Below, piece by piece: positions 3,950-63,695 of a stretch of DNA of 64,000 nt. The stretch comes from Sminthopsis crassicaudata. Its lineage: Eukaryota. Numbering within the stretch: the first letter of the stretch is position 1; the number at the start of each line of letters is the position of its first letter. The notes below the pieces were generated by a model, which did no database searches, was not told where the DNA came from, and saw only the letters and a program-made list of their open reading frames with translations. The translations under genes and the position numbers were made by a program. The stretch spans positions 46,190,001 to 46,254,000 of the forward strand of contig NC_133622.1 of assembly GCF_048593235.1 (NCBI RefSeq). The letters are read 5' to 3'.

Positions 3950-4185
3950 TTGCAAAGCACTTTACAAATATTACATTTTGTAAAACATTTTACAAATATT
4001 ATCTCATTTTGTCCTCAGAACAACTCTAGAAAGTAGGTGATATTATTATCTCCATTTTTTCATAGGAGAAAGTAAATCAGAGGTTAAATTAGGTGCCCAG
4101 AGGCACATAGCTAGTAAGTGATTGAGGAAGGATTTGAATTTAGGGCTTCCTGACTGCAGGTGAAGTACTTTATATATTGTATGAC
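3950..4185 (-). mobile_element. MIR SINE
   Basis: aaagcactttacaaatatt...ctccattt...gcccagaggcacatagctagtaagt...ggatttgaa, with a small internal duplication. Confidence 0.8.
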
Positions 4186-4944
4186 CTAGTTGCCATATCA
4201 CTTCATATTGTGTTAAATAATGGCTTAAATTTAGTTCTTATATGGACTACTTGGCAGCACAGAAAACTTCCAGCTGGTTTACAAAGTAAAACAAAGCATG
4301 TGATTGATAATAGAATGAGGTGTATGATGAATCATTTACAAATCTCTACTACTGGTGGGAAACATCCTCAAGTTACTGATCTACCTATTAAATCTCTTTG
4401 GCTTGTCTTTCCTGTTTATCAAAGCAAACTCTCAAATCCACAAATCTGACAAAGCAAACTCTTTGTTTAGAAATATTTCATAGTCCCGTAATGCTATTCA
4501 GGAGAAATTTCTTTGACATTTAAGGGCTATTCTCCCAGTCTTATTTCACTCTACTTCCTTATTTTCCATCCAAATTGGATTGCTTATCTCTTCCTTTTCT
4601 TTAATCCCTAAATGGGGTAAGTCATCCCTCAGACCTGAAATCCACTCCTTCCATATCTTCACTCTTGAAATTATTTTCTGTCTTCGATGTTCAGTTCATT
4701 TGACACCTCCTTCATAAAATGTTTTCTGATCTCTCAGCTGAAAATGGCCTTCCCTTCTAAGAAATTCACAGAGTTTATCTATCCCTCTATCCTTATCACA
4801 TTCAGTGTTATATCATGCTTATTTGCTTTATTTGTCTTTTTCCTACATCCAGTCTCTACATTATATTATGGTAAATCATTCAATAAACTAGCAACAGTTA
4901 TATACTAAATACTGCTGTTATACTACTATATACCGCTATTAAAA

Positions 4945-10663: not shown

Positions 10664-10911
10664 NNNNNNNNNNNNNNNNNNNNNNNNNNNNNNNNNNNNN
10701 NNNNNNNNNNNNNNNNNNNNNNNNNNNNNNNNNNNNNNNNNNNNNNNNNNNNNNNNNNNNNNNNNNNNNNNNNNNNNNNNNNNNNNNNNNNNNNNNNNNN
10801 NNNNNNNNNNNNNNNNNNNNNNNNNNNNNNNNNNNNNNNNNNNNNNNNNNNNNNNNNNNNNNNNNNNNNNNNNNNNNNNNNNNNNNNNNNNNNNNNNNNN
10901 NNNNNNNNNNN
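10664..10911. other. Assembly gap (248 N)
   Basis: Run of N. Confidence 1.
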
Positions 10912-16277: not shown

Positions 16278-16525
16278 GGGGCAGCTAGAGGTTCAGTGGA
16301 TAGCACACCAGGCTTAGAGCAAAGGAGATCTTAATTTAATTCTGACTTCACACACTGGCTAGCTGTATGACCTTTGGTAAGCCACTTAATTCTGCTTGCC
16401 TCAGTTTCCTCACCTGTAAATGAGCTGGAGAAGGAAATTACAAACTACCTTAGTATCTCTGTCAAGAAAACCCCAACTAAGGTCACAAAAAATCAGACAC
16501 GATTGACAATGTCTGAACAATAAAA
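16278..16525 (+). mobile_element. MAR1-type CORE SINE
   Basis: ggggcagctagaggttcagtggatagcac...gagctggagaaggaaattacaaac...aagaaaacccc...gtctgaacaa; tail shared with the BovB-like RTE 3' end. Confidence 0.85.
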
Positions 16526-16749: not shown

Positions 16750-16895
16750 NNNNNNNNNNNNNNNNNNNNNNNNNNNNNNNNNNNNNNNNNNNNNNNNNNN
16801 NNNNNNNNNNNNNNNNNNNNNNNNNNNNNNNNNNNNNNNNNNNNNNNNNNNNNNNNNNNNNNNNNNNNNNNNNNNNNNNNNNNNNNNNNNNNNNN
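16750..16895. other. Assembly gap (146 N)
   Basis: Run of N. Confidence 1.
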
Positions 16896-23048: not shown

Positions 23049-23256
23049 NNNNNNNNNNNNNNNNNNNNNNNNNNNNNNNNNNNNNNNNNNNNNNNNNNNN
23101 NNNNNNNNNNNNNNNNNNNNNNNNNNNNNNNNNNNNNNNNNNNNNNNNNNNNNNNNNNNNNNNNNNNNNNNNNNNNNNNNNNNNNNNNNNNNNNNNNNNN
23201 NNNNNNNNNNNNNNNNNNNNNNNNNNNNNNNNNNNNNNNNNNNNNNNNNNNNNNNN
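23049..23256. other. Assembly gap (208 N)
   Basis: Run of N. Confidence 1.
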
Positions 23257-24010: not shown

Positions 24011-24250
24011 NNNNNNNNNNNNNNNNNNNNNNNNNNNNNNNNNNNNNNNNNNNNNNNNNNNNNNNNNNNNNNNNNNNNNNNNNNNNNNNNNNNNNNNNNN
24101 NNNNNNNNNNNNNNNNNNNNNNNNNNNNNNNNNNNNNNNNNNNNNNNNNNNNNNNNNNNNNNNNNNNNNNNNNNNNNNNNNNNNNNNNNNNNNNNNNNNN
24201 NNNNNNNNNNNNNNNNNNNNNNNNNNNNNNNNNNNNNNNNNNNNNNNNNN
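24011..24250. other. Assembly gap (240 N)
   Basis: Run of N. Confidence 1.
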
Positions 24251-25071: not shown

Positions 25072-25220
25072 GGGGGCAGCTCAGTGGCTGTGTATAGAAC
25101 ACCTGCCCTGAAGTCAGGAGGACCAGAGTTCAAATTGGTCTCAGATACTCAACACTTCCTAGCTGTGTGACCCTGGGCAAGTCACTTAACCTCAATTACC
25201 CAACAAACTTTTTAAAATAA
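25072..25220 (+). mobile_element. WSINE1/Mar3-type short CORE SINE
   Basis: gggggcagctcagtggc...gaagtcaggaggaccagagttcaaat...ctgtgtgaccctgggcaagtcacttaac; 9-bp TSD taatattta (25063-25071 and 25221-25229). Confidence 0.9.
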
Positions 25221-33419: not shown

Positions 33420-33650
33420 CTAGGTGAAGATAGAGTGCTGAGCCTGAAGTCAGAAAAATATGATTTCAAATCTGGTTTCCAACACTTATTAGCTTCCAAC
33501 ACTTACTAGCTTTGTGATCCTGAAAAAGTCATTTAACTTCTAACTTAATTCACTGAAGAAAGTAGTTCAAGTTTCCTTGCCAAGAAAATCCTGTGGACCA
33601 TACTGATTATAAAGAGTGGAACAGGACTGAATGTCTGAACAACTGCACAG
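33420..33650 (+). mobile_element. MAR1-type SINE
   Basis: gatagagtgctgagcctgaagtcag...ttgccaagaaaatcctgtggacc...ggactgaatgtctgaacaac. Confidence 0.8.
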
Positions 33651-35777
33651 ATGATCTTATTGTGGTTGGATGGAGAGTTTAGGTGTATCAAAGTCAGGAA
33701 GCAAGTTTGTTAAGACTTTATCAGTGATTCATAGGAATACCTTCGTTTTGTCACCGTGCCTATGTTAAAAGCTTTTTCAGATCTCTAGCAATTAATCAGC
33801 AAGCATTTAAGTGTCTGCTACCTGCCAAGCATTGAGGTAGGACCCTTCACAGCTTGAAATCTGCTGGCATAGCATTCAGAGATCTAGGGACACTTCACTG
33901 CCAAATCAAGGTATTGTAAAAAGCTTTTAGTTTTAAAAACAGGGAGAGAGAGGAAGACAGATTATGCATTATACCATAAAAATTGCAATACAAAAGATTA
34001 TCAGTAATTGAGGATACTGAAAATATCTTCACAAGAGACCTTTTCCTCAACCCCTTTCCCCTCAGAAAGTGTAACACTTTTTATCTTTATCTATTTTACT
34101 CATTACTTCAAAGGGACTGAAATGACACTCTCATTAGGTCCATTATTGATCTATCTTTGTTTCTTCACCAGTCAAGGATAAAAACAAACCATTAATTAAC
34201 TGCCTACTATGTGTCTTATGTACTCTGGGTAGCATAGGCACAAATATCTTTACTGCCAGATGACAATAATAATATCTGTAATATACATTTTACATTGTTA
34301 TTGTAAAGCTCAAATGATATAATGTATGTAAATCATAAAGTACTATATAAATGCCAGTTATTTTTAAATGATAAACTACTTAGCAAAATGATAAAATGTT
34401 CCAAAAATCTTAAATTAGGGTTAAAAATACTCATGGACATATTTTCTGCAGTGTAGTCTGATAGAAATAGAAATAATGTATAAGAAGTTAGAGACTACAT
34501 CATAAAAATAAGTAACTGCAGTGGGATTCAGGAAATGTATAGGGTTGTTTAGTATAAATTGGATTTGATGATAAAAATTCCCCTTAGTTGTGGAAAGGTA
34601 TCTTATGAATATATTTTACTTCATTTTTGTATTTTGTATCTAACTGCCTTGTTCTCTGAAGAAAAAGCTGGTGTTGATTAGCATTCAGGCTCTTTAATCC
34701 TTAAGCCGGATCTCTGACATAAATTGTAAAGCCATGGTTATTATTTAGTTACAATTCAATTGTAAAAGAACTCTCCATATCTGAAAACATCCTGCTTCTT
34801 TCTCTATCTTCCTTATACTTTATTTGACAAGAAGAGTAAACATTTCTGCATTTTTTCCTGTTTGGGCAGAGTGCGTGGATTTTCTTCAGTGTGGTGCCAG
34901 AAAAAAAGAAAAAGAAAAAGCTTTAAATGATACGTGACGTGCCTCTAGTCACCTACTGAGATGCTCACAGCAAAGTGGTTAGTTCTCTGTTATTGTGTCA
35001 TTTGATGGATATAACTTCAAAACCATAGCCACTCTGCTCCTCAAAGAAATGAGAAAAGGCCAAATGCTAGTGAGAGATGAGGGCTACAAGAAATAGCAAC
35101 TCTACTGGAAACCTGAAGCTGCTGGGAAATGGCACACAGGCCACAAAGGTTCATGCTTGTGCATAAACTAAGTTATAGTTACTTACCCATTTAGTGAGCA
35201 TATTCTCATTCATTACAGATTAATTATTTGTTCCAAAAATATGAAAGGACTCCATTTTATGAGAATAGTCAGTATTTTGGGACATCACAAAACAGGGCAC
35301 TGATCCGGGGATGGCATTGAAGTGGAAAAAGAAAATGAAGATCTTGAGGAAGTGTTTGTAATGACCTATACATAAACACATACCATGGCCAATATAGATA
35401 GCTGCTGCTCCATAAATAATTGTAGTTGCTTGCTAACTTTGATTTTATTCAGTCTAAAACCAAGAATTGCTCCACAGATAATTGTTGACAGTTGCAGACG
35501 CTCATTTCATTCAATTAAGCTGGTAACCTTTTTAGGGAACTGTTTGGGACAAAGCCAGGAATTCCAGTCAATTGAATTCTAGAACTGAATTATAATTGTC
35601 TTCGTATAGAAATAACTAAACTATAGTTTGTGGCAGTGATAACTGCTTTTTGTGTTTTAGTTTTTTAAATCTCTCTCTACAGTTTTAAGTACCCAAGTGG
35701 ACAGAAAAGAGAAATTACATCCTCAAGATGAGTATTTGCTTAACTTGATTGTAAATGGGAAAGACTGGAAAGATTTT

Positions 35778-35778
<1 letters not shown>

Positions 35779-35820
<42 letters not shown>
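35779..35820. repeat. (CA)n microsatellite
   Basis: Direct reading. Confidence 0.95.
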
Positions 35821-35822
<2 letters not shown>

Positions 35823-36901
35823 GTTAACAGAAGTCTGAAGCCATTGTTGCAAGGAAATATGCCTAGAAGAAAAATCTCTTGTGATCTTTACCTAGTTTGA
35901 AAAGCTTCAAAGACTAGCCCAGGTAGTGAACTATATACTAACTAAGGCTTGAGAGGCTCATCCCCAGAGGATTGATTTGTTTTTGGACAAAGTCTGTAAT
36001 CTTTCTTCTTAGTCTTTATTAATAGAGGATCACCCTCATGGATGCGAACAGATATTGGGAGAAGTATTGAAGGAGATAGCTGTTATATATACATGCTAAA
36101 GGTAAGAGAATAAGAGACTATTTTCAAGATACATTCAATTTGAAGGAAAATCCTGGTTAGTGCAATGGATTATATCCTAGAGTTCCAACTTCACTCAAAC
36201 ATGCTCCCCAATTGAACATTTTATGTATGAAGGAATGGGGATGTGATATTTGACCTATGGTATTCCAAGTGTGATTTTGTTGTTTTTCTTTTAGGTAAAA
36301 CTTATGGACAAATAATATGAGATGATTTTAAATGCTTCTTTTTATACACATATCCTTTAGAATGACTTATTGATGGAGAAAAGGTCAGATGTTTAATTTT
36401 CCTCCCTGCCAACGTTAGATTTATTCAACTGTATGGGAGTAGACTGAATACCCAAGTCAGTTTTAGTAAGACTCCTTAAAAAAAAAAAAAAAACTTTTGT
36501 TAGTCATAGTGGAAAAGATACTGGATGTTGTGGATAGATCAATATATATCCTATACTCTTTGGAAAATGGAACTTAAAGCATATGCCCAATTTACAGTGA
36601 CTCAAGAGGGTCTTTGTGAGACTTAGGTTGACTTTTCAGGTTGGATCAGATCTACAGGTATGGAAATTACAATCAATAAAAGGAAAAAATTATAAATCCT
36701 GTAAATTATATTCTAGCAGTTTTCATTCATTGACTTTACCTTCCTCATGCTGACATTTTGAAAACAATATGCTTTATCTCAAAAGAGGTTTTATAATTCA
36801 TCCTACTAGTTATTACTTTTTTTTTCTTTTCCTCTGAATCAGAGGATGCTAACTGGTTGACTCTTCAAGGGAACAAAAAACAACAAATAACAACAAAAAA
36901 C

Positions 36902-37190
36902 ATGTCATTTAAAAAGTTCATTTCTAGGAATCTGATGAACCAACCACAAATATAAAGCCTACTAAATTATATGCCTTCATTTTACACAGAACAGAGCTTT
37001 TAAAAGTATATCTATCTCTACCTCACAGGATCATGTTTGATAAAATCACACACAATTTAAAATTAATCATATGTAACTGATTTTTCAAAGAGTGGACAGT
37101 GCAAGGGTGGAGGGAGAAGCTGTAAATGAAGCACTGGAGAAATCCAAAGAAAAGAACTGTACTTAAATCTGGAAAGTTAAACATGTTTCT
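36902..37190 (+). repeat. Long inverted repeat, left arm (~290 bp)
   Basis: Reverse complement of 38080-38372; exact blocks include 36958-36984 vs 38286-38312 (27 nt) and 36986-37014 vs 38256-38284 (29 nt). Confidence 0.97.
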
Positions 37191-38079
37191 CTATGTTTCT
37201 CTAATATGTTGTTCCTTTTACAATTCAGTAGCTGTTATGCTTTTCATCATTCTGAATGGATCAAAGTTAGAAATGATAGTGGCAAAGAGGTGCCATTGGG
37301 TATAGGATATTCAACAAAAAACTCTCAAGACCCAAATCACATTTTATAACAAAAGGAAACAGCTATTTGAGGCTGTCAGCCAATGTTTAACCATTGTCCT
37401 TTTACGTAATTTTTTTTCTTTTTGGGGGTATGTTGAAGAGAGGGGGATATGAAGAGATGAGGATAGTGGGTAGGAATTGAGCAAAAAGACTTAATTGGAA
37501 TATAAATCAAAATACAGAGGTTTTGAAACAAGGTAGTCTGCATAAAAATGTATAACTAAAAGTGCTGAATGTAACTGACTTTTTGTATAAAGGCAATATA
37601 ATATGCCAAAGGGTCAGTCAGCTTCCAGTAAATGAGAGACCCTGACACACAGTAAATTGATGTGAAAAATTAGTTTTAATCTAAGATTTCTGACCTTCAC
37701 AACAATTTTCTTAAAAGTTGAATGAGATTAATTATAAAAGAAATTCTCTGTAGCATTTGATTTCTGAATTTGTCTTTTCATTAGTCTTGTAATAAACATA
37801 AGCATATCAATTTGTGTATGTTTTAGGAGAATGTTCACTAGTGCTATGAATTAGATTTGGATTGTTGCTGGAGGTTTTATTTTATTTTATCATATTCATA
37901 TTCTGAAATTTTAAATATACGAAGTTATTAGTTTTTAGCAATTTCATTTGCCCTGAGATTACCCTACAATTTATATTCTTGTCATTACTTAGGACATTTA
38001 AAGCAGATAGACTTCCTGTTGGGTTCTTATACAGAAACCCTTATTGCTTTTTCAAAAATCCAGCTGGTCTTTTCCCCCA

Positions 38080-38372
38080 AGAAAATGTTTTGCTTTCCAG
38101 ATTTAAGTAAAGTTTCTTTCTTTGGATTTCTCCAGTGTTTCCTTTCCAGGTTCTCCCTCCACCCTTGCACTGCCCCCTCTTCGAAAAATCAGTTACATAT
38201 GATTAATATTAAATTGTGTGTGATTTTTATCCTGCACGATCCTGTTCGGTAGAGGTAGATATACTTTTAAAAGCTCTGTTCTGTCTAAAATGAAGGCATA
38301 TAATTTAGTAGGTTTTATATTTGTGGTGGGTTCTTCATCAGACTCCCAAAACTAAACTTTTTAAAATGACAT
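38080..38372 (-). repeat. Long inverted repeat, right arm (~290 bp)
   Basis: Reverse complement of 36902-37190, about 85-90% identity by eye. Confidence 0.97.
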
Positions 38373-39074
38373 TTTTCCTATGGGAAAATCACATTCATCC
38401 TAATTTTGTTTTGATTTACAGTACTGTTTCTGGAAACCTAATCCTTTATAACTTTAAACACTGCTTATATAAATGAATGCAATCACATTGGTTGCAATAA
38501 TGAGGCTCTTGGTATACATTATTTCATAGAACAATATATTCATATATGGATATGATTTTTTTTTTGAGCTAGTAATTTTTTTCTGGTCTGTTAATTCAGA
38601 ATTTAATCTCATAGAATTAAAAACATTTTGTATGAATGAACATAATCTGATCACCAAGAATCATTTATGTTTAAAATAAATATCACTTTCATCTAAATAA
38701 AATAATCTTGTGACTTCATTTGATATATCATAGGTGTCGTCACTTTCTAACAATAAACTTACTGAAATATAATATGAGATATTACAATGTCAGTTTTTCA
38801 GACTGTTATATAATGAAATTCATTCCTATTCCTAATGATTCTGTTTTAATTTGATTTTTATTAGTCTGCTTCCATCCATTCTTGTCCTTTGCTTAGTTTT
38901 GAAAGTAATAGAAAATGTCATTTCAATGACTATAGGAATAGTAAAATCTTTTCAATTGGTGTGGTAATTTTGGCAAATCAACAACTTTTAAAAATTATTT
39001 TTAAAGGTGAATCTGTCTTTAAAAGAGATTACTTTCCCAAACCAGTGTAGTTGTATTTTGAATTAAATTTATAT

Positions 39075-39160
39075 AAAGGTATATATCTATATATATGTAT
39101 ATATATAGATAGATAGATAGATAGATATAGACATCTATATATATAGATATATATATAATG
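39075..39160. repeat. (TA)n/(GATA)n compound microsatellite
   Basis: Direct reading. Confidence 0.9.
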
Positions 39161-40404
39161 AATTACTTTTCAATTCTATTTTCATATATTTATTTTAGGG
39201 TTTTTTTGAAAATAAAATAATAAATTATCATAATGAATCATTGCTGTTATAGACTACTTCGACTGATGTATTTCTTATATTCTGTGAATGTGTACTGCTC
39301 AGGATGAATAGAGAAGGCTTCCACCTGCAAAAAAGATTTTCATGTTTTAACCAAATATAAATAGTACATACAGAGGATATACTATTATAACATTTACCCC
39401 ATTGCTGGTCACAGAGAGAGATTTTCAAAACATTCAATGTCAGACCTGCAGTCAACTTTCCATTTTTTCCACCAACAGATTATCCCCAGGGAGTCTGGAA
39501 AGCTCGAAAGTGATTCAACCACGCTGTTGATTTTCTTATGTTCTATGTTGACTTTTCTACCTGTAAGAACTAAGGTCTGTATCCCTGAAGGATCTAGAAA
39601 AGATATTTAGTGGGAACTGATATTGCTGCTCAATAAATAAAAGTGTCTCTCTTCAAACCTGAATTTAAAAATGAAGGGAAAAATGAAAATACCTAATTAT
39701 CTTTTAATTTTCTTCTTACCTATCTGCCCATGTAAAGTATATGTTAATATAGTTAAGTTAAAAAGGAAATTAGGGCCTCTTTAAGACTGGCCTTTAACTA
39801 AGTGAGTGATTGTATATGTGGAGAAAAGGGCATAAGTGAAGAAAAGATGAGGTACCCCTGCTCATGTCTTTACATTATACCTTCCATATTTTTAAAGAAG
39901 CTTTGAATGTCTAAGTCCAGAAGCAATGCAGATTATAACTCCCTAACAATAGCAAAAATAATGAATAGTTGCCTCTTCTAATTCGCCATATAAATTCACT
40001 ACAAAGTTATAAAGCTTCTCCATACAAAGTCTTGTGATAGGTGTTGAGGGAGATAAAAGAAATAGTGATGAATAAAATATGGTTTCTTTTATTAAAGAGC
40101 TTTCTAGTAGATATCTTTGTAGCATAAAATGTTAGATATTAGAAATCACTTCATCTTATTTTCCATTTCACAAATAATGAGCTAATTCCATAGAGGTCCC
40201 AGGTCTTTGAATTTGGAGTCTAGTCCATTGCTATTTACCATGCTGTGTTTTATATTCCATACTATCCCTAAGGTCAGAAGCTCAGGGATGTCTTCATCTA
40301 AGTTGGACTTTGTGTATGTTTGTTCATGAATACTGACAATAAAAAGCCTTGATTATTTTTGACTGAATATGAATATGAATATTGTAGAACAAAAAGAAGA
40401 AAAA

Positions 40405-40655
40405 GTTGTTGTAGCTATTATTCAGTTGTGTCTCTCTTTGTGACATCATGGACCATAGCATGTCAATAATGTCCACAAAATTTTCTTGCCAAAATACTTA
40501 GTGTGAATTGTCATTATCCTTCTCCATTAAGGAGAACAAAGATTAAGTAATTTTTGCCCAGGGTCACACAGAAGTAAGTGTCTGAGGCCAGATTTGAACT
40601 TATCACTTCTTGATTCCAGGTCCAGCTTTCTATCCATCAGGCTACTTAGATGCCT
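40405..40655 (-). mobile_element. MAR1-type SINE
   Basis: attcagttgtgtc...tttcttgccaaaatact...gcccagggtcacacag...gtgtctgaggccagatttgaac. Confidence 0.8.
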
Positions 40656-40879
40656 TATACTTTTGTAACTGATTAACCTCAAAAGCAAAGTTTTGGATCA
40701 CAGATCCAAAACCAGAAGACATCTGAGAGGCCATTTAGCCCAATTATTTTACAGTTGAAGAATCTAAGTTATTTCTCCACCTCCACTCCCAGGTGACACA
40801 AGTATGAAGTTTCCAAGGTAGCAACTCAATTTGGAATTGGCCTGTGGAAAATGAAATTTCTGCCATTGAACCAAATGGA

Positions 40880-41914: not shown

Positions 41915-42150
41915 TTAGCATGAAGCAGATAGGTGGTACAGTGGAATTGGGAGAGTTCAAAACCAGCTTCAGACACTTACTGTGTAACCCTGGACAAACC
42001 ACTTAATTAATCAGTTAAATGTGATTTCCATTCCTTCAGCTTTAAAATGAGCTGGAGAAGGAAACAGCAAACCACCCCAATATCTTTTCCAAGAAAAGCC
42101 TAAAAGGGGGGCACAACGAGTTGGACATGGCTGAATAACAATAGCAAGAT
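41915..42150 (+). mobile_element. MAR1-type SINE
   Basis: tgagctggagaaggaaacagcaaaccaccccaatatcttttccaagaaaag...gagttggacatggctgaataac. Confidence 0.85.
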
Positions 42151-46077: not shown

Positions 46078-46235
46078 NNNNNNNNNNNNNNNNNNNNNNN
46101 NNNNNNNNNNNNNNNNNNNNNNNNNNNNNNNNNNNNNNNNNNNNNNNNNNNNNNNNNNNNNNNNNNNNNNNNNNNNNNNNNNNNNNNNNNNNNNNNNNNN
46201 NNNNNNNNNNNNNNNNNNNNNNNNNNNNNNNNNNN
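46078..46235. other. Assembly gap (158 N)
   Basis: Run of N. Confidence 1.
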
Positions 46236-46400: not shown

Positions 46401-49400
46401 AAAAGATAAGGAAGGAAACTATATCCTGCTGAAAGGTAGCATAAATAATGAAGCCATATCAATACTAAACATATATGCACCAAGTGGTATAGCATCTAAC
46501 TTTCTAAAGGAAAAGTTAAGAGAACTGCAAGAAGAAATAGACAGTAAAACTATAATAGTGGGAGATCTCAACCTTGCACTCTCAGATTTAGACAAATCAA
46601 ACCACAAAACAAACAAGAAAGAAATTAAAAAAGTAAATAGAACATTAGAAAAACTAGGTATGATAGACCTTTGGAGAAAACTGAATGGCAATAGGAAGGA
46701 ATATACTTTCTTCTCAGCAGTTCATGGATCCTATACAAAAATTGACCATATATTAGGACATAAAGATCTCAAAATTAAATGTAGGAAGGCAGAAATAATA
46801 AATGCCTTCTTCTCAGATCACAATGCAATAAAAGCTACATTCAGTAAAAAGTTAGGGGTAAATAGACCAAAAAGTAATTGGAAACTGAATAATCTCATCT
46901 TAAAGAATGACTGGGTGAAAGAGCAAATTATAGAAACAATTAACAATTTCACCCAAGATAATGATAATGATGAGACATCATATCAAAATCTTTGGGATGC
47001 AGCTAAAGCAGTAATAAGGGGAAATTTTATATCTTTAGAGGCTTATTTGAAGAAAATTGAGAAAGAGAAGATTAACGAATTGGGCTTACAACTTAAAAGG
47101 CTAGAAAAAGACCAAATTATAAACCCCCAACCAAAAATTAAACTCGAAATACAAAAATTAAAAGGAGAAATCAATAAAATTGAAAGTAAAAAAACTATTG
47201 AATTAATAAATAAAACCAAGAGTTGGTTTTATGAAAAAGCCAATAAAATAGATAAACCTTTGGTAAATTTGATCAAAAAAAAGAAAGAGGAAAATCAAAT
47301 TGATAGTCTTACAAATGAAAAGGGGGATCTTTCCACCAATGAAGAGGAAATTAGAGAAATAATAAGGAGTTACTTTGCCCAACTTTATGCCAATAAATTT
47401 GATAACTTAAGTGAAATGGATGACTTTCTCCAAAAATATAGGCTCCCTAGATTAACAGAGGAGGAGATAAATTGCTTAAATAGTCCCATTTCAGAAAAAG
47501 AAATAGAACAAGCTATTAATCAACTCCCCAGGAAAAAATCCCCAGGGCCAGATGGATTCACATGTGAATTCTACCAAACATTTAAAGAACAATTAGCCCC
47601 AATGTTATATAAATTATTTGAAAAAATAGGGGATGAAGGAGTCCTACCAAACTCCTTTTATGACACAGACATGGTACTGATACCTAAACCTGGTAGATCA
47701 AAAACTGAGAAAGAAAATTATAGACCAATCTCCTTAATGAATATTGATGCTAAAATCTTAAATAAGATATTAGCAAAAAGACTTCAGAAAATCATCTCCA
47801 AGATAATACACTATGATCAAGTAGGATTTATTCCAGGAATGCAGGGCTGGTTTAATATTAGGAAAACTATTAATATAATTGACCATATTAATAATCAAAT
47901 TAATAAGAACCATATGATCATCTCAATAGATGCAGAAAAAGCATTTGACAAAATCCAACATCCATTCCTACTAAAAACTCTTGAGAGTATAGGAATAAAT
48001 GGATTATTCCTTAGAATAATCAGGAGTATATATTTAAGACCGTCAGTAAGCATAATATGCAATAGAAATAAACTGCAACCTTTCCCAGTAAGATCAGGAG
48101 TGAAACAAGGTTGCCCACTATCACCATTACTATTCAATATAGTACTAGAAACGCTAGCCTCGGCAATAAGAGCCGAGAAAGAGATTCAAGGAATTAGAGT
48201 AGGAAATGAGGAAATCAAACTATCACTTTTTGCAGATGACATGATGGTATACTTAGAGAACCCCAAAGACTCTGCTAAAAAGCTACTAGAAATAATTCAA
48301 AATTTCAGCAAAGTGGCAGGATACAAAATAAATCCACATAAATCCTCGGCATTTTTATATATCACTAACAAAATGCAACAGCAAGAGATACAAAGAGAAA
48401 TTCCATTCCAAACAAATGTTGAGAGTATAAAATATTTGGGAATCCATCTACCAAAGAAAAGTCAGGAATTATATGAGAAAAATTACAAAACACTTGCCAC
48501 AAAAATAAAATCAGATTTAAATAATTGGAAAGACATTCAGTGCTCTTGGATAGGCCGAGCGAATATAATAAAGATGACAATACTCCCCAAACTAATCTAT
48601 TTATTTAGTGCTATACCAATCAGACTCCCAAGAAACTATTTTAATGACCTAGAAAAAATAACAACAAAATTCATATGGAAGAATAAAAGGTCGAGAATTG
48701 CAAGGGAACTAATGAAAAAAAACTCAGAGGAAGGTGGTCTAAGTGTACCTGATCTAAAGCTATATTATATAGCAGCAGTCACCAAAACCATTTGGTATTG
48801 GCTAAGAAATAGACCGGTAGATCAGTGGAACAGATTAGATACAAAGGACAAAAAAGGGTACATCTATAGCAATCTAATCTTTGACAAACCCAAAGATTCC
48901 AACATTAAGGATAAAAATTCATTATTCGGAAAAAACTGTTGGGAAAACTGGAAATTAGTATGGCAGAAATTAGATATGGATCCACACTTAACACCATATA
49001 CCAAGATAAGATCAAAATGGGTCCATGATTTAGGCATAAAGAGGGAGATAATAAATAGATTAGAGGAACAGAGGATAATCTACCTCTCAGACTTGTGGAG
49101 GAGGAAGGAATTTATGACCAGAGGAGAACTAGAGATCATTATTGATCACAAAATAGAAGATTTTGATTACATCAAACTAAAAAGTTTCTGTACAAATAAT
49201 ACTAATGCAAACAAGATTAGAAGGGAAGTAACAAATTGGGAAAATATTTTTAAAAACAAAGGTTCTGACAAAGGTCTCATTTCCAAAATATATAGAGAAC
49301 TGACCCTAATTTATAAGAAACCGAACCATTCTCCAATTGATAAATGGTCAAAGGATATGAACAGACAATTCTCAGAGGAAGAAATTGAAACTATATCCAC

Positions 49401-50333
49401 TCACATGAAAGAGTGTTCCAAATCACTACTGATCAGAGAAATGCAAATTAAGACCACTCTGAGATACCACTACACACCTGTCAGATTGGCTAAGATGACA
49501 GGAACAAATAATGACAAATGTTGGAGGGGATGTGGGGAAACTGGGACACTAATACATTGCTGGTGGAGTTGTGAAAGAATCCAGCCATTCTGGAGAGCAA
49601 TCTGGAATTATGCCCAAAAAGTTATCAAACTGTGCATACCCTTTGACCCAGCAGCGCTACTACTGGGATTATATCCCAAAGAAATACTAAAGAGCAGAAA
49701 GAGACATATATGTGCCAAAATGTTTGTGGCAGCTCTTTTTGTTGTAGCTAGAAACTGGAGGATGAATGGATGTCCATCAGTTGGAGAATGGTTGGGTAAA
49801 TTGTGGTATATGAAGGTTATGGAATATTATTGCTCGGTAAGAAATGACCAGCAGGAGGAATACAGAGAGGCCTGGAGAGACTTAAATCAACTGATGCTGA
49901 GTGAAATGAGCAGAACCAGAAGATCACTGTACACTTCAACAACAATACTGTATGAGGATGTATCCTGATGGAAGTGGAAATCTTCAACATAAAGAAGATC
50001 CAACTCACTTCCAGTTGATCAATGATGGACAGAGGTAGCTGCACCCAGAGAAGAAACACTGGGAGGGGAATGAAAATTGTTAGCACTACAATCTGTCTGC
50101 CCAGGTTGCATGTACCTTCGGATTCTAATGTTTATTGTGCAACAAGAAAATGCTATTCGCACACATGTATTGTACCTAGACTATATTGTAACACATGTAA
50201 GATGTATGGTATTGCCTGTCGTCGGGGGGAGGGAATAGAGGGAGGGGGGGTAAATTGGAAGGATGAATACAAGGGATAATATTATAAAATATATATATAT
50301 ATATAATAAAAAAAAAATAATCATAAAAAAAAA
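46401..50333 (+). mobile_element. Young L1 LINE, 5'-truncated within the ORF2 endonuclease domain
   Basis: Perfect 16-bp TSD aaaaatagtttttatt (46385-46400 and 50334-50349) at a TT/AAAA site; ORF2, 3' UTR with G-rich tract, AATAAA and poly(A). Confidence 0.98.
46402..49968 (+). CDS. L1 ORF2 (endonuclease / reverse transcriptase / CCHC), uninterrupted 1188 codons but lacking the start codon and N-terminal endonuclease residues
   Basis: Frame is open 52 codons upstream of the listed ORF ([13 protein letters not shown]...). Motifs [50 protein letters not shown] and [18 protein letters not shown] are present. Confidence 0.9.
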
Positions 50334-53297: not shown

Positions 53298-53436
53298 NNN
53301 NNNNNNNNNNNNNNNNNNNNNNNNNNNNNNNNNNNNNNNNNNNNNNNNNNNNNNNNNNNNNNNNNNNNNNNNNNNNNNNNNNNNNNNNNNNNNNNNNNNN
53401 NNNNNNNNNNNNNNNNNNNNNNNNNNNNNNNNNNNN
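53298..53436. other. Assembly gap (139 N)
   Basis: Run of N. Confidence 1.
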
Positions 53437-57651: not shown

Positions 57652-58611
57652 CTTTTTTTGTTGTTGTTGTTGCTGCTGCAAAGGAAGGATTGTATTCGGA
57701 AGGTAAAAATAACCTGGGAAGAGAAACAAAACAAAACAAAACAAAATACAAAACAAACAAACAAAAAAAAAAACAATGCTCACAGTTTATACTCATTTCC
57801 CAGTGTTCCTTTTCTGGGTGTAGCTGATTCTGTTCATCATTGATCAATTGGAATTGGATTAGCTCTTCTCTATGTTGAAGATATACACTTCAATCAGAAT
57901 ACATCCTCATACAGTATCATTGTTGAAGTGAATCTTCTGGTTCTGCTCGTTTCACTCAGCATCAGTTGATGTAAGTCTCTCCAAGCCTCTCTGTATTCCT
58001 CCTGTTGGTTATTTCTTACAGAACAATAATATTCCATAACATTCATATACCATAATTTACCCAACCATTCTCCAATGGATGGACATCCATTCATCTTCCA
58101 GCTTCTAGGCACTGTGAAAAGGGCTGCCACAAACATTTTGGCACATACAGGTCCCTTTCCCTTCTTTAGTAGTTCCTTGGGATATAAGCCCAGTAGTAGT
58201 ACGGCTGGGTCAAAAGGTATGCACATTTTGATAACTTTTTGGGCATAATTCCAGATTGCTCTCCAGAATGGTTGGATTCTTTCACAACTCCACCAACAAT
58301 GCATCAGTGTCCCAGTTTTCCCACAGCCCCTCCAACATTCATCGTTATTTGTTCCTGTCATCTTAGCCAATCTGACAGGAGTGTAATGATACCTCAGAGT
58401 TGTCTTAATTTGCATTTCTCTGATCAATAGTGATTTGGAACACTCTTTCATATGAGTGGAAATAGTTTTAATTTTATCATCTGAAAATTGTCTGTTCATA
58501 TCCTTTGACCATTTATCAATTGGAGAATGGCTTGATTTCTTATAAATTAAAGTCAATTCTCTGTATATTTTGGAGATGAGGCTTTTATCAGAACCTTTAA
58601 CTGTAAAAATG
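57652..58611 (-). mobile_element. L1 fragment (ORF2 C-terminal 220 aa open), truncated at both ends
   Basis: ORF 57894-58556 with an intact CCHC knuckle; 11-bp TSD gaaaactatct (57641-57651 and 58612-58622). Confidence 0.95.
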
Positions 58612-63563: not shown

Positions 63564-63695
63564 NNNNNNNNNNNNNNNNNNNNNNNNNNNNNNNNNNNNN
63601 NNNNNNNNNNNNNNNNNNNNNNNNNNNNNNNNNNNNNNNNNNNNNNNNNNNNNNNNNNNNNNNNNNNNNNNNNNNNNNNNNNNNNNNNNNNNNNN
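63564..63695. other. Assembly gap (132 N)
   Basis: Run of N. Confidence 1.

What the first reader, a model, noticed from the sequence alone, without database searches (positions are those of the whole stretch)
36902..38372. ~290-bp inverted duplication of apparently unique sequence around an 889-bp spacer
Seen: 36902-37190 is the reverse complement of 38080-38372 at about 85-90% identity by eye, with perfect blocks of 29, 27, 25, 22 and 21 nt. I recognise no SINE/LINE in the arms, find no TSD outside them and no transposase in the spacer. Established: intronic inverted repeats of this size form long RNA duplexes that attract ADAR editing, promote back-splicing or exon skipping, and can cause nuclear retention; in DNA they promote inversion and arm-to-arm gene conversion. 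Inference: a locus-specific, non-TE fold-back element, or a decayed long-TIR DNA transposon. This is the most unexplained structure in the window.
Basis: partly seen in the sequence, partly recalled or inferred. Interest (0 to 1): 0.75.

Follow-up and report, generated by a model that had tools for sequence, protein, structure and literature searches.

The report
Old one-off inverted DNA duplication
A marsupial genome holds a real, single-locus pair of ~295-base mirror-image copies around an 889-base spacer; it is shared by at least three related species and looks like an old, slowly decaying scar of one DNA breakage or copying error, with no function shown.

Summary
Arms 36898-37190 and 38080-38376 are reverse complements, with 263 matches in 298 columns (88%) and an 889-bp spacer. 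It is not an assembly artefact: contigs from an independent animal of the same species cross all four arm boundaries. It is not an interspersed repeat: there is no third copy in the window and no pile-up of contigs on the arms at 80% likeness in two whole-genome runs. No target-site duplication, transposase, protein domain or RNA family was found. Two other species, about 6-7% diverged, also carry both arms. The arms differ by about 10.7% (corrected), so the duplication is older than those species splits and neutral decay explains what is seen. The best reading is a locus-specific inverted duplication from one repair or replication event, either a staggered-break micro-inversion or a template switch. 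An outgroup that lacks it is needed to choose. If transcribed, it would fold into about 265 bp of imperfect double-stranded RNA. Several enriched, non-genomic libraries cover a block that starts at the left arm's outer edge, but their type is unknown and neither editing nor back-splicing was seen. The scan has noted similar inverted duplications elsewhere in this genome. Ordinary; low interest.

The parts
36898..37190 (+). Left arm of the inverted duplication (293 nt)
   Evidence: 88.3% identical to the reverse complement of the right arm. Independent-animal contig 35830-37117 crosses its outer boundary and contig 37089-38180 crosses its inner boundary.
37191..38079 (.). 889-bp spacer: unique, non-coding, no internal symmetry
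   Evidence: the spacer halves against each other, and the spacer against the flanks, score at shuffle level; only short ORFs, with no Pfam hit; no Rfam hit; contiguous in contigs of organisms A and B.
38080..38376 (-). Right arm of the inverted duplication (297 nt)
   Evidence: Independent-animal contig 38152-39040 crosses its outer boundary. It is present in organism B (contig 36933-38348) and in organism G (pieces 37540-38213, 38184-38266, 38238-38721).
36872..36902 (+). A-rich microsatellite (AACAAAAAAC)x3 abutting the outer end of the left arm; the only place in the stretch where contigs pile up
   Evidence: period 10, 3.1 copies; the bin 36802-36909 has depth 714 in X8, against about 45 in the flanks.
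37183..37203 (+). 10-bp tandem duplication ATGTTTCTCT x2.1 straddling the left arm/spacer junction; a possible repair-junction or slippage footprint (inference)
   Evidence: The arm homology ends at 37190, inside the first copy.
36880..39040 (.). Left part of a block of at least 4.2 kb covered at depth about 30 in run X5, a non-WGS library of unknown type. There is no cover for about 1 kb to its left, and the block runs on about 2 kb beyond 39040.
   Evidence: tables 2 and 8: zero depth at 35830-36801 in 8 of 9 bins (one short piece at depth 2.7), then contigs from about 36.9 kb onward, including a 2752-nt contig that starts at 38288. X5, X6, X7 and X10 hold 0.53-0.71 of the words of 35400-39900. 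The start coordinate is approximate.

Best explanation
This is a single-locus inverted segmental duplication of otherwise unique, non-coding sequence. One mutational event created it in a common ancestor of at least three related marsupial species, and it has drifted neutrally since. Two origins fit the anatomy, which is sharp homology ends, no TSD and one spacer. (a) A micro-inversion of about 1.2 kb with a staggered break about 295 nt wide at one end, whose fill-in leaves the staggered stretch at both ends in opposite orientation. (b) A replication or repair template switch that copied about 295 nt from the opposite strand and inserted it about 0.9 kb away. Shown here: it is real, it is unique, it occurs in three species, and arm divergence exceeds species divergence. 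Inferred: the mechanism, and the lack of function. As a by-product, any transcript that crosses it can fold into about 265 bp of imperfect double-stranded RNA.
For: The structure is real: whole-genome contigs of a different animal and study (X8) cross flank/left arm, left arm/spacer/right arm and right arm/flank (table 8). Arms that are 12% diverged are also not what a fold-back assembly error produces. The arms are unique. No third copy turns up in 64 kb at word-7 blastn, although the same search finds 5 copies of a MIR-like repeat for 40529-40662. Summed depth on the arms is 27-58 in X8 against about 45 in the flanks, and about 20 in X13 against about 20-25 in the flanks, at 80% likeness (table 2). 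It is not a transposon or a gene: there is no TSD by direct reading, and no Pfam or Rfam hit. The 53- and 77-codon frames shared by the arms differ mostly by amino-acid changes. It is old. One organism B contig (36933-38348) spans the left arm, spacer and right arm with 97 substitutions in 1416 nt. Organism G has pieces on both arms. The arm-to-arm Jukes-Cantor distance is 0.107, against 0.072 between organisms A and B, so the event predates the split and no gene conversion is needed. There is no sign of selection for pairing: only 6-8 of 29 mismatches would be G:U, and transitions to transversions are 14:15. The staggered-break model with inverted duplications of unique sequence is described by Ranz et al. 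2007 (PMC1885836).
Against: No outgroup without the duplication was seen, so neither the ancestral state nor the choice between (a) and (b) is shown. The table of differences was cut (233 rows hidden), so no arm-by-arm tree across species could be built and gene conversion is not excluded. In organism B the outermost 30 nt or more of the two arms appear identical: contigs break there, and 37 letters after 36900 fit the right arm of organism A better. That could be chance or conversion. Very old repeat families, below about 65-80% identity, would escape both copy-number tests. The enriched cover in X5-X7 and X10 starts right at the left arm's outer edge. This is unexplained and could point to a transcript or a chromatin feature tied to the structure.
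Confidence: 0.72

Rival explanations
1. The structure is a functional long hairpin RNA element. Both arms lie in one stable transcript, and the stem of about 265 bp serves as an ADAR, Dicer or Staufen substrate, for example for nuclear retention or as an endo-siRNA source.
For: Runs X5, X6, X7 and X10 (one study) and X11 (another) hold 0.40-0.71 of the stretch's words, although they are not whole-genome runs. In X5 the cover is a flat block at depth about 30 that begins at about 36.9 kb, contains both arms and runs at least 4.2 kb, with nothing for 1 kb to the left. A declared RNA-Seq library of organism G also holds both arms. The predicted fold pairs 262-267 arm-arm positions on either strand. 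Cofold energy is -382 to -395 kcal/mol, against -113 with a shuffled partner. On the minus strand an AATGAA hexamer at 36922 is followed by a GU/U-rich tract at 36872-36899, an arrangement typical of a poly(A) site (and direct reading).
Against: The library type of X5 is only a guess. It could be histone ChIP, because a dunnart H3K4me3/H3K27ac data set with two replicates per mark exists (PMC12563553). Contigs give neither strand nor transcript ends. The RNA library of organism G covers both flanks equally, so it may reflect pre-mRNA or DNA carry-over. X5 shows no A>G excess (A>G 6 and T>C 6 of 32 changes), and most of the X5 variants listed are also in DNA run X8. The arms diverge at about the neutral rate with no excess of G:U-compatible changes. 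Organism G may have lost the outer third of the left arm (joint 36621 to 37004, weak).
Confidence: 0.1
2. The structure is a relic of a non-autonomous DNA transposon with long (about 295 bp) terminal inverted repeats, or of a foldback element, present at one or very few copies.
For: The geometry fits: two long inverted ends around an internal segment of about 0.9 kb with no long ORF.
Against: No TSD of 2-10 bp flanks the unit; the left flank ends ...AACAAAAAAC and the right flank starts TTTTCCTATG. The spacer has no transposase or any other Pfam domain. There is no other copy in the window and no pile-up on the arms in whole-genome contigs of organisms A and B at 80% likeness. A family that left a single copy is unusual.
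Confidence: 0.07
3. The arms are two independent insertions of the same interspersed repeat in opposite orientation.
For: This is the commonest source of inverted repeats in mammalian DNA (established knowledge). The window does carry MIR-like and L1 copies.
Against: Two copies that are 88% alike imply a family with many members at 80% or more, yet none is seen in the window or in the whole-genome contigs. Both copies also start and end at the same positions, and neither has a tail or a TSD.
Confidence: 0.04
4. The structure is an assembly artefact, a fold-back chimera.
For: Fold-back chimeras occur in long-read assemblies, and the scan has noted 98-100% identical inverted duplications elsewhere in this genome.
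Against: The arms differ by 12%. All four boundaries are crossed by contigs of an independent animal, and two other species carry the structure.
Confidence: 0.01

Closest known systems
Inverted duplications of unique sequence at inversion breakpoints (staggered-break model; Ranz et al. 2007, PLoS Biol, PMC1885836)
   Same: Two inverted copies of otherwise non-repetitive sequence bracket a segment. The homology ends are sharp, there is no TE and there is no TSD.
   Different: Those cases are large chromosomal inversions in Drosophila, shown by outgroup comparison. Here the bracketed segment is only 889 bp, the animal is a mammal, and inversion of the spacer relative to an ancestor has not been shown.
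Replication or repair template-switch inverted duplications (short template switches, FoSTeS/MMBIR; from my own knowledge, not tested here)
   Same: A nearby stretch is copied from the opposite strand and inserted close by. There is possible microhomology at the left arm's ends: an A-run at the outer end, and ATGTTTCT repeated at the inner end.
   Different: Short template switches are usually tens of bases and FoSTeS events usually kilobases or more, whereas this copy is about 295 nt. The microhomologies are weak and could be chance.
Inverted-repeat Alu pairs (IRAlus) in primate transcripts that form ADAR-edited dsRNA (from my own knowledge)
   Same: The arm length (about 300 nt), arm identity (85-90%) and spacing of about 1 kb are in the range that forms intramolecular dsRNA. 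The predicted stem is about 265 bp.
   Different: The arms here are not SINEs and are unique in the genome. Transcription across both arms and editing are not shown.
The CFAP97 inverted duplication of about 315 bp in this same genome (earlier scan finding s1-153394)
   Same: Same genome, same arm size, genome-unique arms, and judged a decaying duplication scar.
   Different: That one brackets an exon. Here no exon is seen between or near the arms. I did not re-test that finding.

Membership tests
Class II DNA transposon with long TIRs / MITE / foldback element | Target-site duplication directly flanking the two outer ends | tested here: not met
   the left flank ends ...ACAACAAAAAAC and the right flank begins TTTTCCTATGGG. 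No direct repeat of 2-10 bp lies at or within a few bases of the homology ends.
Class II DNA transposon with long TIRs / MITE / foldback element | Multiple related copies in the genome | tested here: not met
   no third copy in 64 kb at word-7 blastn; no extra contigs on the arms at 80% likeness in whole-genome runs X8 and X13. Copies below about 65-80% identity would be missed.
Class II DNA transposon with long TIRs / MITE / foldback element | Transposase ORF, or similarity to an autonomous element | tested here: not met
   the spacer and arm ORFs are 77 aa or shorter and have no meaningful Pfam hit. No repeat library such as Dfam or Repbase was available.
Inversion-associated inverted duplication (staggered breaks) | Inverted copies of otherwise unique sequence bracketing a segment, with sharp ends | tested here: met
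Inversion-associated inverted duplication (staggered breaks) | The bracketed segment is inverted, and the arm is single-copy, in an outgroup | not testable with these tools
All three species laid already carry both arms.
dsRNA-forming inverted repeat in a transcript (IRAlu-like ADAR substrate) | Both arms lie in one RNA molecule | tested here: inconclusive
   X5 contigs cover both arms and the spacer, but the library type is a guess and contigs break inside the arms. X18 is a declared RNA-Seq library but covers the flanks equally.
dsRNA-forming inverted repeat in a transcript (IRAlu-like ADAR substrate) | Clustered A-to-G (or T-to-C) differences between RNA and DNA in the arms | tested here: inconclusive
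   X5 has A>G 6 and T>C 6 of 32 changes, most of those listed shared with DNA run X8. Contigs drop minority variants, so editing cannot be excluded.
Intronic inverted repeats that drive back-splicing (circRNA) | An exon between the arms and a back-splice joint | tested here: not met
   table 5: X5 and X18 show no splice-like joint inside 36898-38376. X5 has no joints at all, and the one X18 joint (36621 to 37004) starts outside the unit, is weak and looks like a deletion. One X5 contig covers 37316-38182, and shorter X5 contigs link it to the left arm; the spacer shows no coding signal.

The most novel reading that the evidence does not exclude
The whole inverted duplication sits inside an unspliced transcript of at least 4.2 kb, or at the edge of an active chromatin block, whose end coincides with the outer edge of the left arm. 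Under this reading it acts as a dasyurid-conserved long hairpin RNA locus (an endo-siRNA source or ADAR/Staufen substrate) built from unique sequence, not from SINEs.
Probability: 0.06. Interest if true: 0.6.

Novelty: new member of a known kind. Interest (0 to 1): 0.2.

Why it matters
On its own it matters little. It is one more small inverted duplication of unique DNA, with a relative date (older than the split of three related marsupials) and no sign of constraint. Its modest value is as a clean, verified, non-TE example that could be used in two ways. With an outgroup genome, it could show which mutational process makes such 0.3-kb arm, 1-kb spacer structures in marsupials; the scan has noted many of them in this genome. 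With stranded RNA and small-RNA reads, it could show whether unique-sequence inverted repeats are handled like IRAlus in a mammal that lacks Alus.

Tried and rejected
- Rfam, at gathering threshold on the whole window and at E-value threshold on 36500-38800, gave nothing except a chance Phe_leader match at E 0.19 on the A/T-rich tract.
- tRNA scan of the window found none.
- Pfam on six ORFs in the arms, spacer and right flank gave nothing meaningful; the one match, YafQ_toxin at E 0.026 and below cut-off, is chance.
- I searched for decayed extensions of the repeat into the flanks or the spacer, and for LTR-like direct repeats in 28-46 kb. None were found.
- I tried to reach orthologous DNA of other marsupials through the protein collection. 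None of ten local ORFs is in it, so I did not spend the costly homology search.
- I tried to name the host gene from ORFs in the GC-richer spots and to the right of the structure. Nothing looked coding, so the genomic context (intron or intergenic) stays unknown.
- Strand-skew tests, to guess which arm is original or whether the spacer is inverted, were uninformative. AT skew of 293-nt windows has SD 0.14.
A look-up by sequence was blank.
- The assembly-artefact and two-TE-insertion readings were rejected.

Full report
**1. The observation**

The repeat finder reports three collinear inverted pairs. A gapped local alignment joins them into one pair.
- The arms are 36898-37190 and the reverse complement of 38080-38376.
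- The alignment has 298 columns, 263 matches (88.3%), 6 gap columns and 29 substitutions (14 transitions, 15 transversions).
- The spacer is 37191-38079, 889 bp.
- blastn within the window gives E = 3e-103.

Homology ends sharply. The outer flanks compared in either orientation, the two halves of the spacer, and the spacer against 2 kb of either flank all score at the level of shuffled sequence.

**2. Real or artefact**

The run search found the stretch in the probable source sample and in other studies of the same organism (A). It also found it, at word shares of 0.07-0.12, in several other organisms (B-G). An earlier scan note on this genome names it as the fat-tailed dunnart; I did not verify that.

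I laid four runs on 35830-39040 at 80% likeness. In X8, whole-genome contigs of a different sample and study of organism A, three contigs matter.
- Contig 35830-37117 crosses the flank/left-arm boundary.
- Contig 37089-38180 crosses both arm/spacer boundaries.
- Contig 38152-39040 crosses the right-arm/flank boundary.

The arms are also 12% diverged, which is not what a fold-back chimera looks like. Together these exclude an assembly artefact.

There is one limit. The contigs (k=31) break inside the arms at exact blocks that the arms share: 37089-37117 pairs with 38152-38180. The orientation of the spacer relative to the flanks therefore cannot be phased in the independent runs.

**3. Multi-copy or unique**

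- Within the window, a word-7 blastn of each arm finds only the other arm.
- The same search finds five copies of a MIR-like repeat for 40529-40662, so it can see old interspersed repeats.
- In the whole-genome contigs, summed depth on the arm bins is 27-58 in X8 against about 45 in the flanks. In X13 it is about 20 against about 20-25 in the flanks.
- The only pile-up (714 in X8) is the bin holding the A-rich microsatellite at 36872-36902.
- The short extra pieces listed in table 8 lie on low-complexity spots (36874-36918, 37421-37460, 37860-37901), not on the arm cores.

So the arms are single-copy at 80% identity or more in two species. Families below about 65-80% identity would escape these tests, and no repeat library was available.

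**4. What it is not**

- No direct repeat flanks the unit.
- The spacer and arms carry only ORFs of 77 aa or less, with no meaningful Pfam hit.
- The open frame shared by the arms differs by about 9 amino acids in 44 codons on direct reading, so it is not under coding constraint.
- Rfam and the tRNA scan are blank.
- There are no LTR-like direct repeats nearby.
- The nearest clear transposons are an L1 with a 1136-codon ORF2 at 46558-49968 and an L1 ORF2 tail at 57894-58556.

**5. Age and mode of evolution**

In organism B one contig spans 36933-38348, which is most of the left arm, the spacer and most of the right arm. It has 97 substitutions and 29 gap letters in 1416 nt. Organism G, a declared RNA-Seq library, has pieces at 37056-37354, 37540-38213, 38184-38266 and 38238-38721, so it carries both arms too.

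The Jukes-Cantor distance between the arms is 0.107 (29 of 292). Between organisms A and B over the same region it is 0.072. The duplication therefore predates the split by a factor of about 1.5. That agrees with its presence in all three species, and neutral decay without gene conversion is enough to explain it.

Nothing suggests that pairing is preserved. Only 6 (plus strand) or 8 (minus strand) of the 29 mismatches would be G:U, and transitions do not dominate.

One search's table of differences was cut (233 rows hidden), so I could not build an arm-by-arm tree across species. Conversion is not excluded.

Two small hints came up.
- In organism B the contigs break in the outermost part of both arms, and the 37 letters after 36900 fit organism A's right arm better than its left. 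B's arms are therefore probably identical there over 30 nt or more. By rough count this is within chance.
- In organism A, the allele 37036 C (X8, X5) matches the right arm while organism B keeps T. That is a single transition, so no weight can be put on it.

**6. How it most likely arose (inference)**

The anatomy is unique sequence, sharp ends, no TSD and one spacer. Two known processes fit it.
- (a) An inversion whose break at one end was staggered by about 295 nt. Fill-in of the overhangs followed by end joining leaves the staggered stretch at both ends of the inverted segment in opposite orientation. This is the model of Ranz et al. 2007 (PMC1885836). It predicts that one arm's outer junction and the other arm's inner junction are ancestral, and that the other two are repair joints.
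- (b) A replication or repair template switch that copied about 295 nt from the opposite strand and resumed about 0.9 kb away.

Two features are compatible with the left arm's boundaries being repair joints. One is the 10-bp tandem duplication ATGTTTCTCT x2 across the left arm/spacer junction (37183-37203). The other is the A-run at the left arm's outer end. Both could also be later slippage or chance. Only an outgroup that lacks the duplication can decide.

**7. Possible activity**

If an RNA crosses the unit, the minimum-energy fold pairs 262-267 arm-arm positions on either strand, with perfect helices up to 31-42 bp. Arm-arm cofold energy is -382 to -395 kcal/mol, against -113 with a shuffled partner.

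Is it transcribed? Runs X5, X6, X7 and X10 (one study) hold 0.53-0.71 of the words, and X11 (another study) holds 0.40. Two sister runs of X11 hold almost none.
- In X5 the cover is zero over 35830-36801, apart from one short piece at depth 2.7.
- It begins at about 36.9 kb and continues at depth about 30 through both arms, the spacer and at least 2 kb beyond 39040.
- It is therefore an enriched block, not random DNA. Its edge coincides with the outer edge of the left arm and the A-rich tract.

The library type is only a guess.
- The contig statistics resemble those of the declared RNA run X18.
- A dunnart H3K4me3/H3K27ac ChIP data set with two replicates per mark also exists (PMC12563553) and would equally give four enriched runs.
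- On the minus strand an AATGAA hexamer at 36922 is followed by a GU/U-rich tract at 36872-36899, as at a poly(A) site (and direct reading). This is a lead, not evidence.

No joints lie inside the structure in X5, so no splicing or back-splicing was seen. There is no A>G excess, and most of the listed X5 variants are also in DNA run X8. Contigs cannot show strand, transcript ends or minority editing.

Organism G's library covers both flanks alike, so it may be pre-mRNA or DNA carry-over. It also shows a weak joint from 36621 to 37004 (side 30), which may be a lineage-specific loss of the outer third of the left arm.

**8. Comparison and verdict**

The structure works like, and most probably is, an inverted duplication scar of the kind described at inversion breakpoints or produced by template switching. 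It fails the testable criteria for a long-TIR transposon. It has the geometry of an IRAlu-type dsRNA former, but transcription and editing are not shown.

The scan has noted 22 items with the words "inverted duplication" in this genome. They include a CFAP97 case of about 315 bp that a follow-up judged a decaying scar (s1-153394). This finding is therefore one of a recurrent class here, not a singular oddity.

Novelty: new member of a known kind. Interest: low (0.2). The only open thread worth a look is the enriched block that starts at the left arm.

**Constraints observed**

The N stretches were not filled or looked up. 

Noticed in passing
window 38246-38247: The reference reads TC where all four laid runs read GA: two other animals of the same species and two other species. 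GA restores the match to the left arm. GA to TC is its own reverse complement, so this is a private dinucleotide change, a 2-nt micro-inversion, or an error in the reference.
   Followed up: partly
window 46558-49968 (+): An uninterrupted ORF of 1136 codons with a reverse transcriptase domain (RVT_1, E 4e-50) and the tail of an endonuclease domain. It is a fairly young L1 ORF2. An N stretch at 46078-46235 lies just upstream.
   Followed up: partly
window 57894-58556 (-): A 220-codon ORF with no Pfam hit. It reads like the C-terminal cysteine-rich end of L1 ORF2 (…[12 protein letters not shown]…CWRGCG…HCWW…), a recognition from my own knowledge.
   Followed up: partly
window 40529-40662, with copies near 4070-4203, 25075-25192, 41954-42012, 16297-16470 and 33429-33488: An old MIR-like interspersed repeat with at least six diverged copies (62-79% identity) in the window. 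It served as a positive control for the copy-number search.
   Followed up: no
It is either an unspliced transcript or a histone-mark domain in AT-rich DNA with no CpG island (9 CpGs in 36000-39500).
   Followed up: partly
window 36621-37004, in organism G (run X18): One contig jumps from 36621 to 37004, with only 30 letters on the far side. This may be a deletion in that species that removes the left flank and the outer third of the left arm.
   Followed up: no
window 10664-10911, 16750-16895, 23049-23256, 24011-24250, 46078-46235, 53298-53436, 63564-63695: Seven N stretches of 132-248 nt. The letters beside them show no clear splice signals, and some abut simple repeats.
   Followed up: no
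window 39054-39161: A compound (TA)n/(TAGA)n microsatellite, partly palindromic, 680 nt to the right of the right arm.
   Followed up: no
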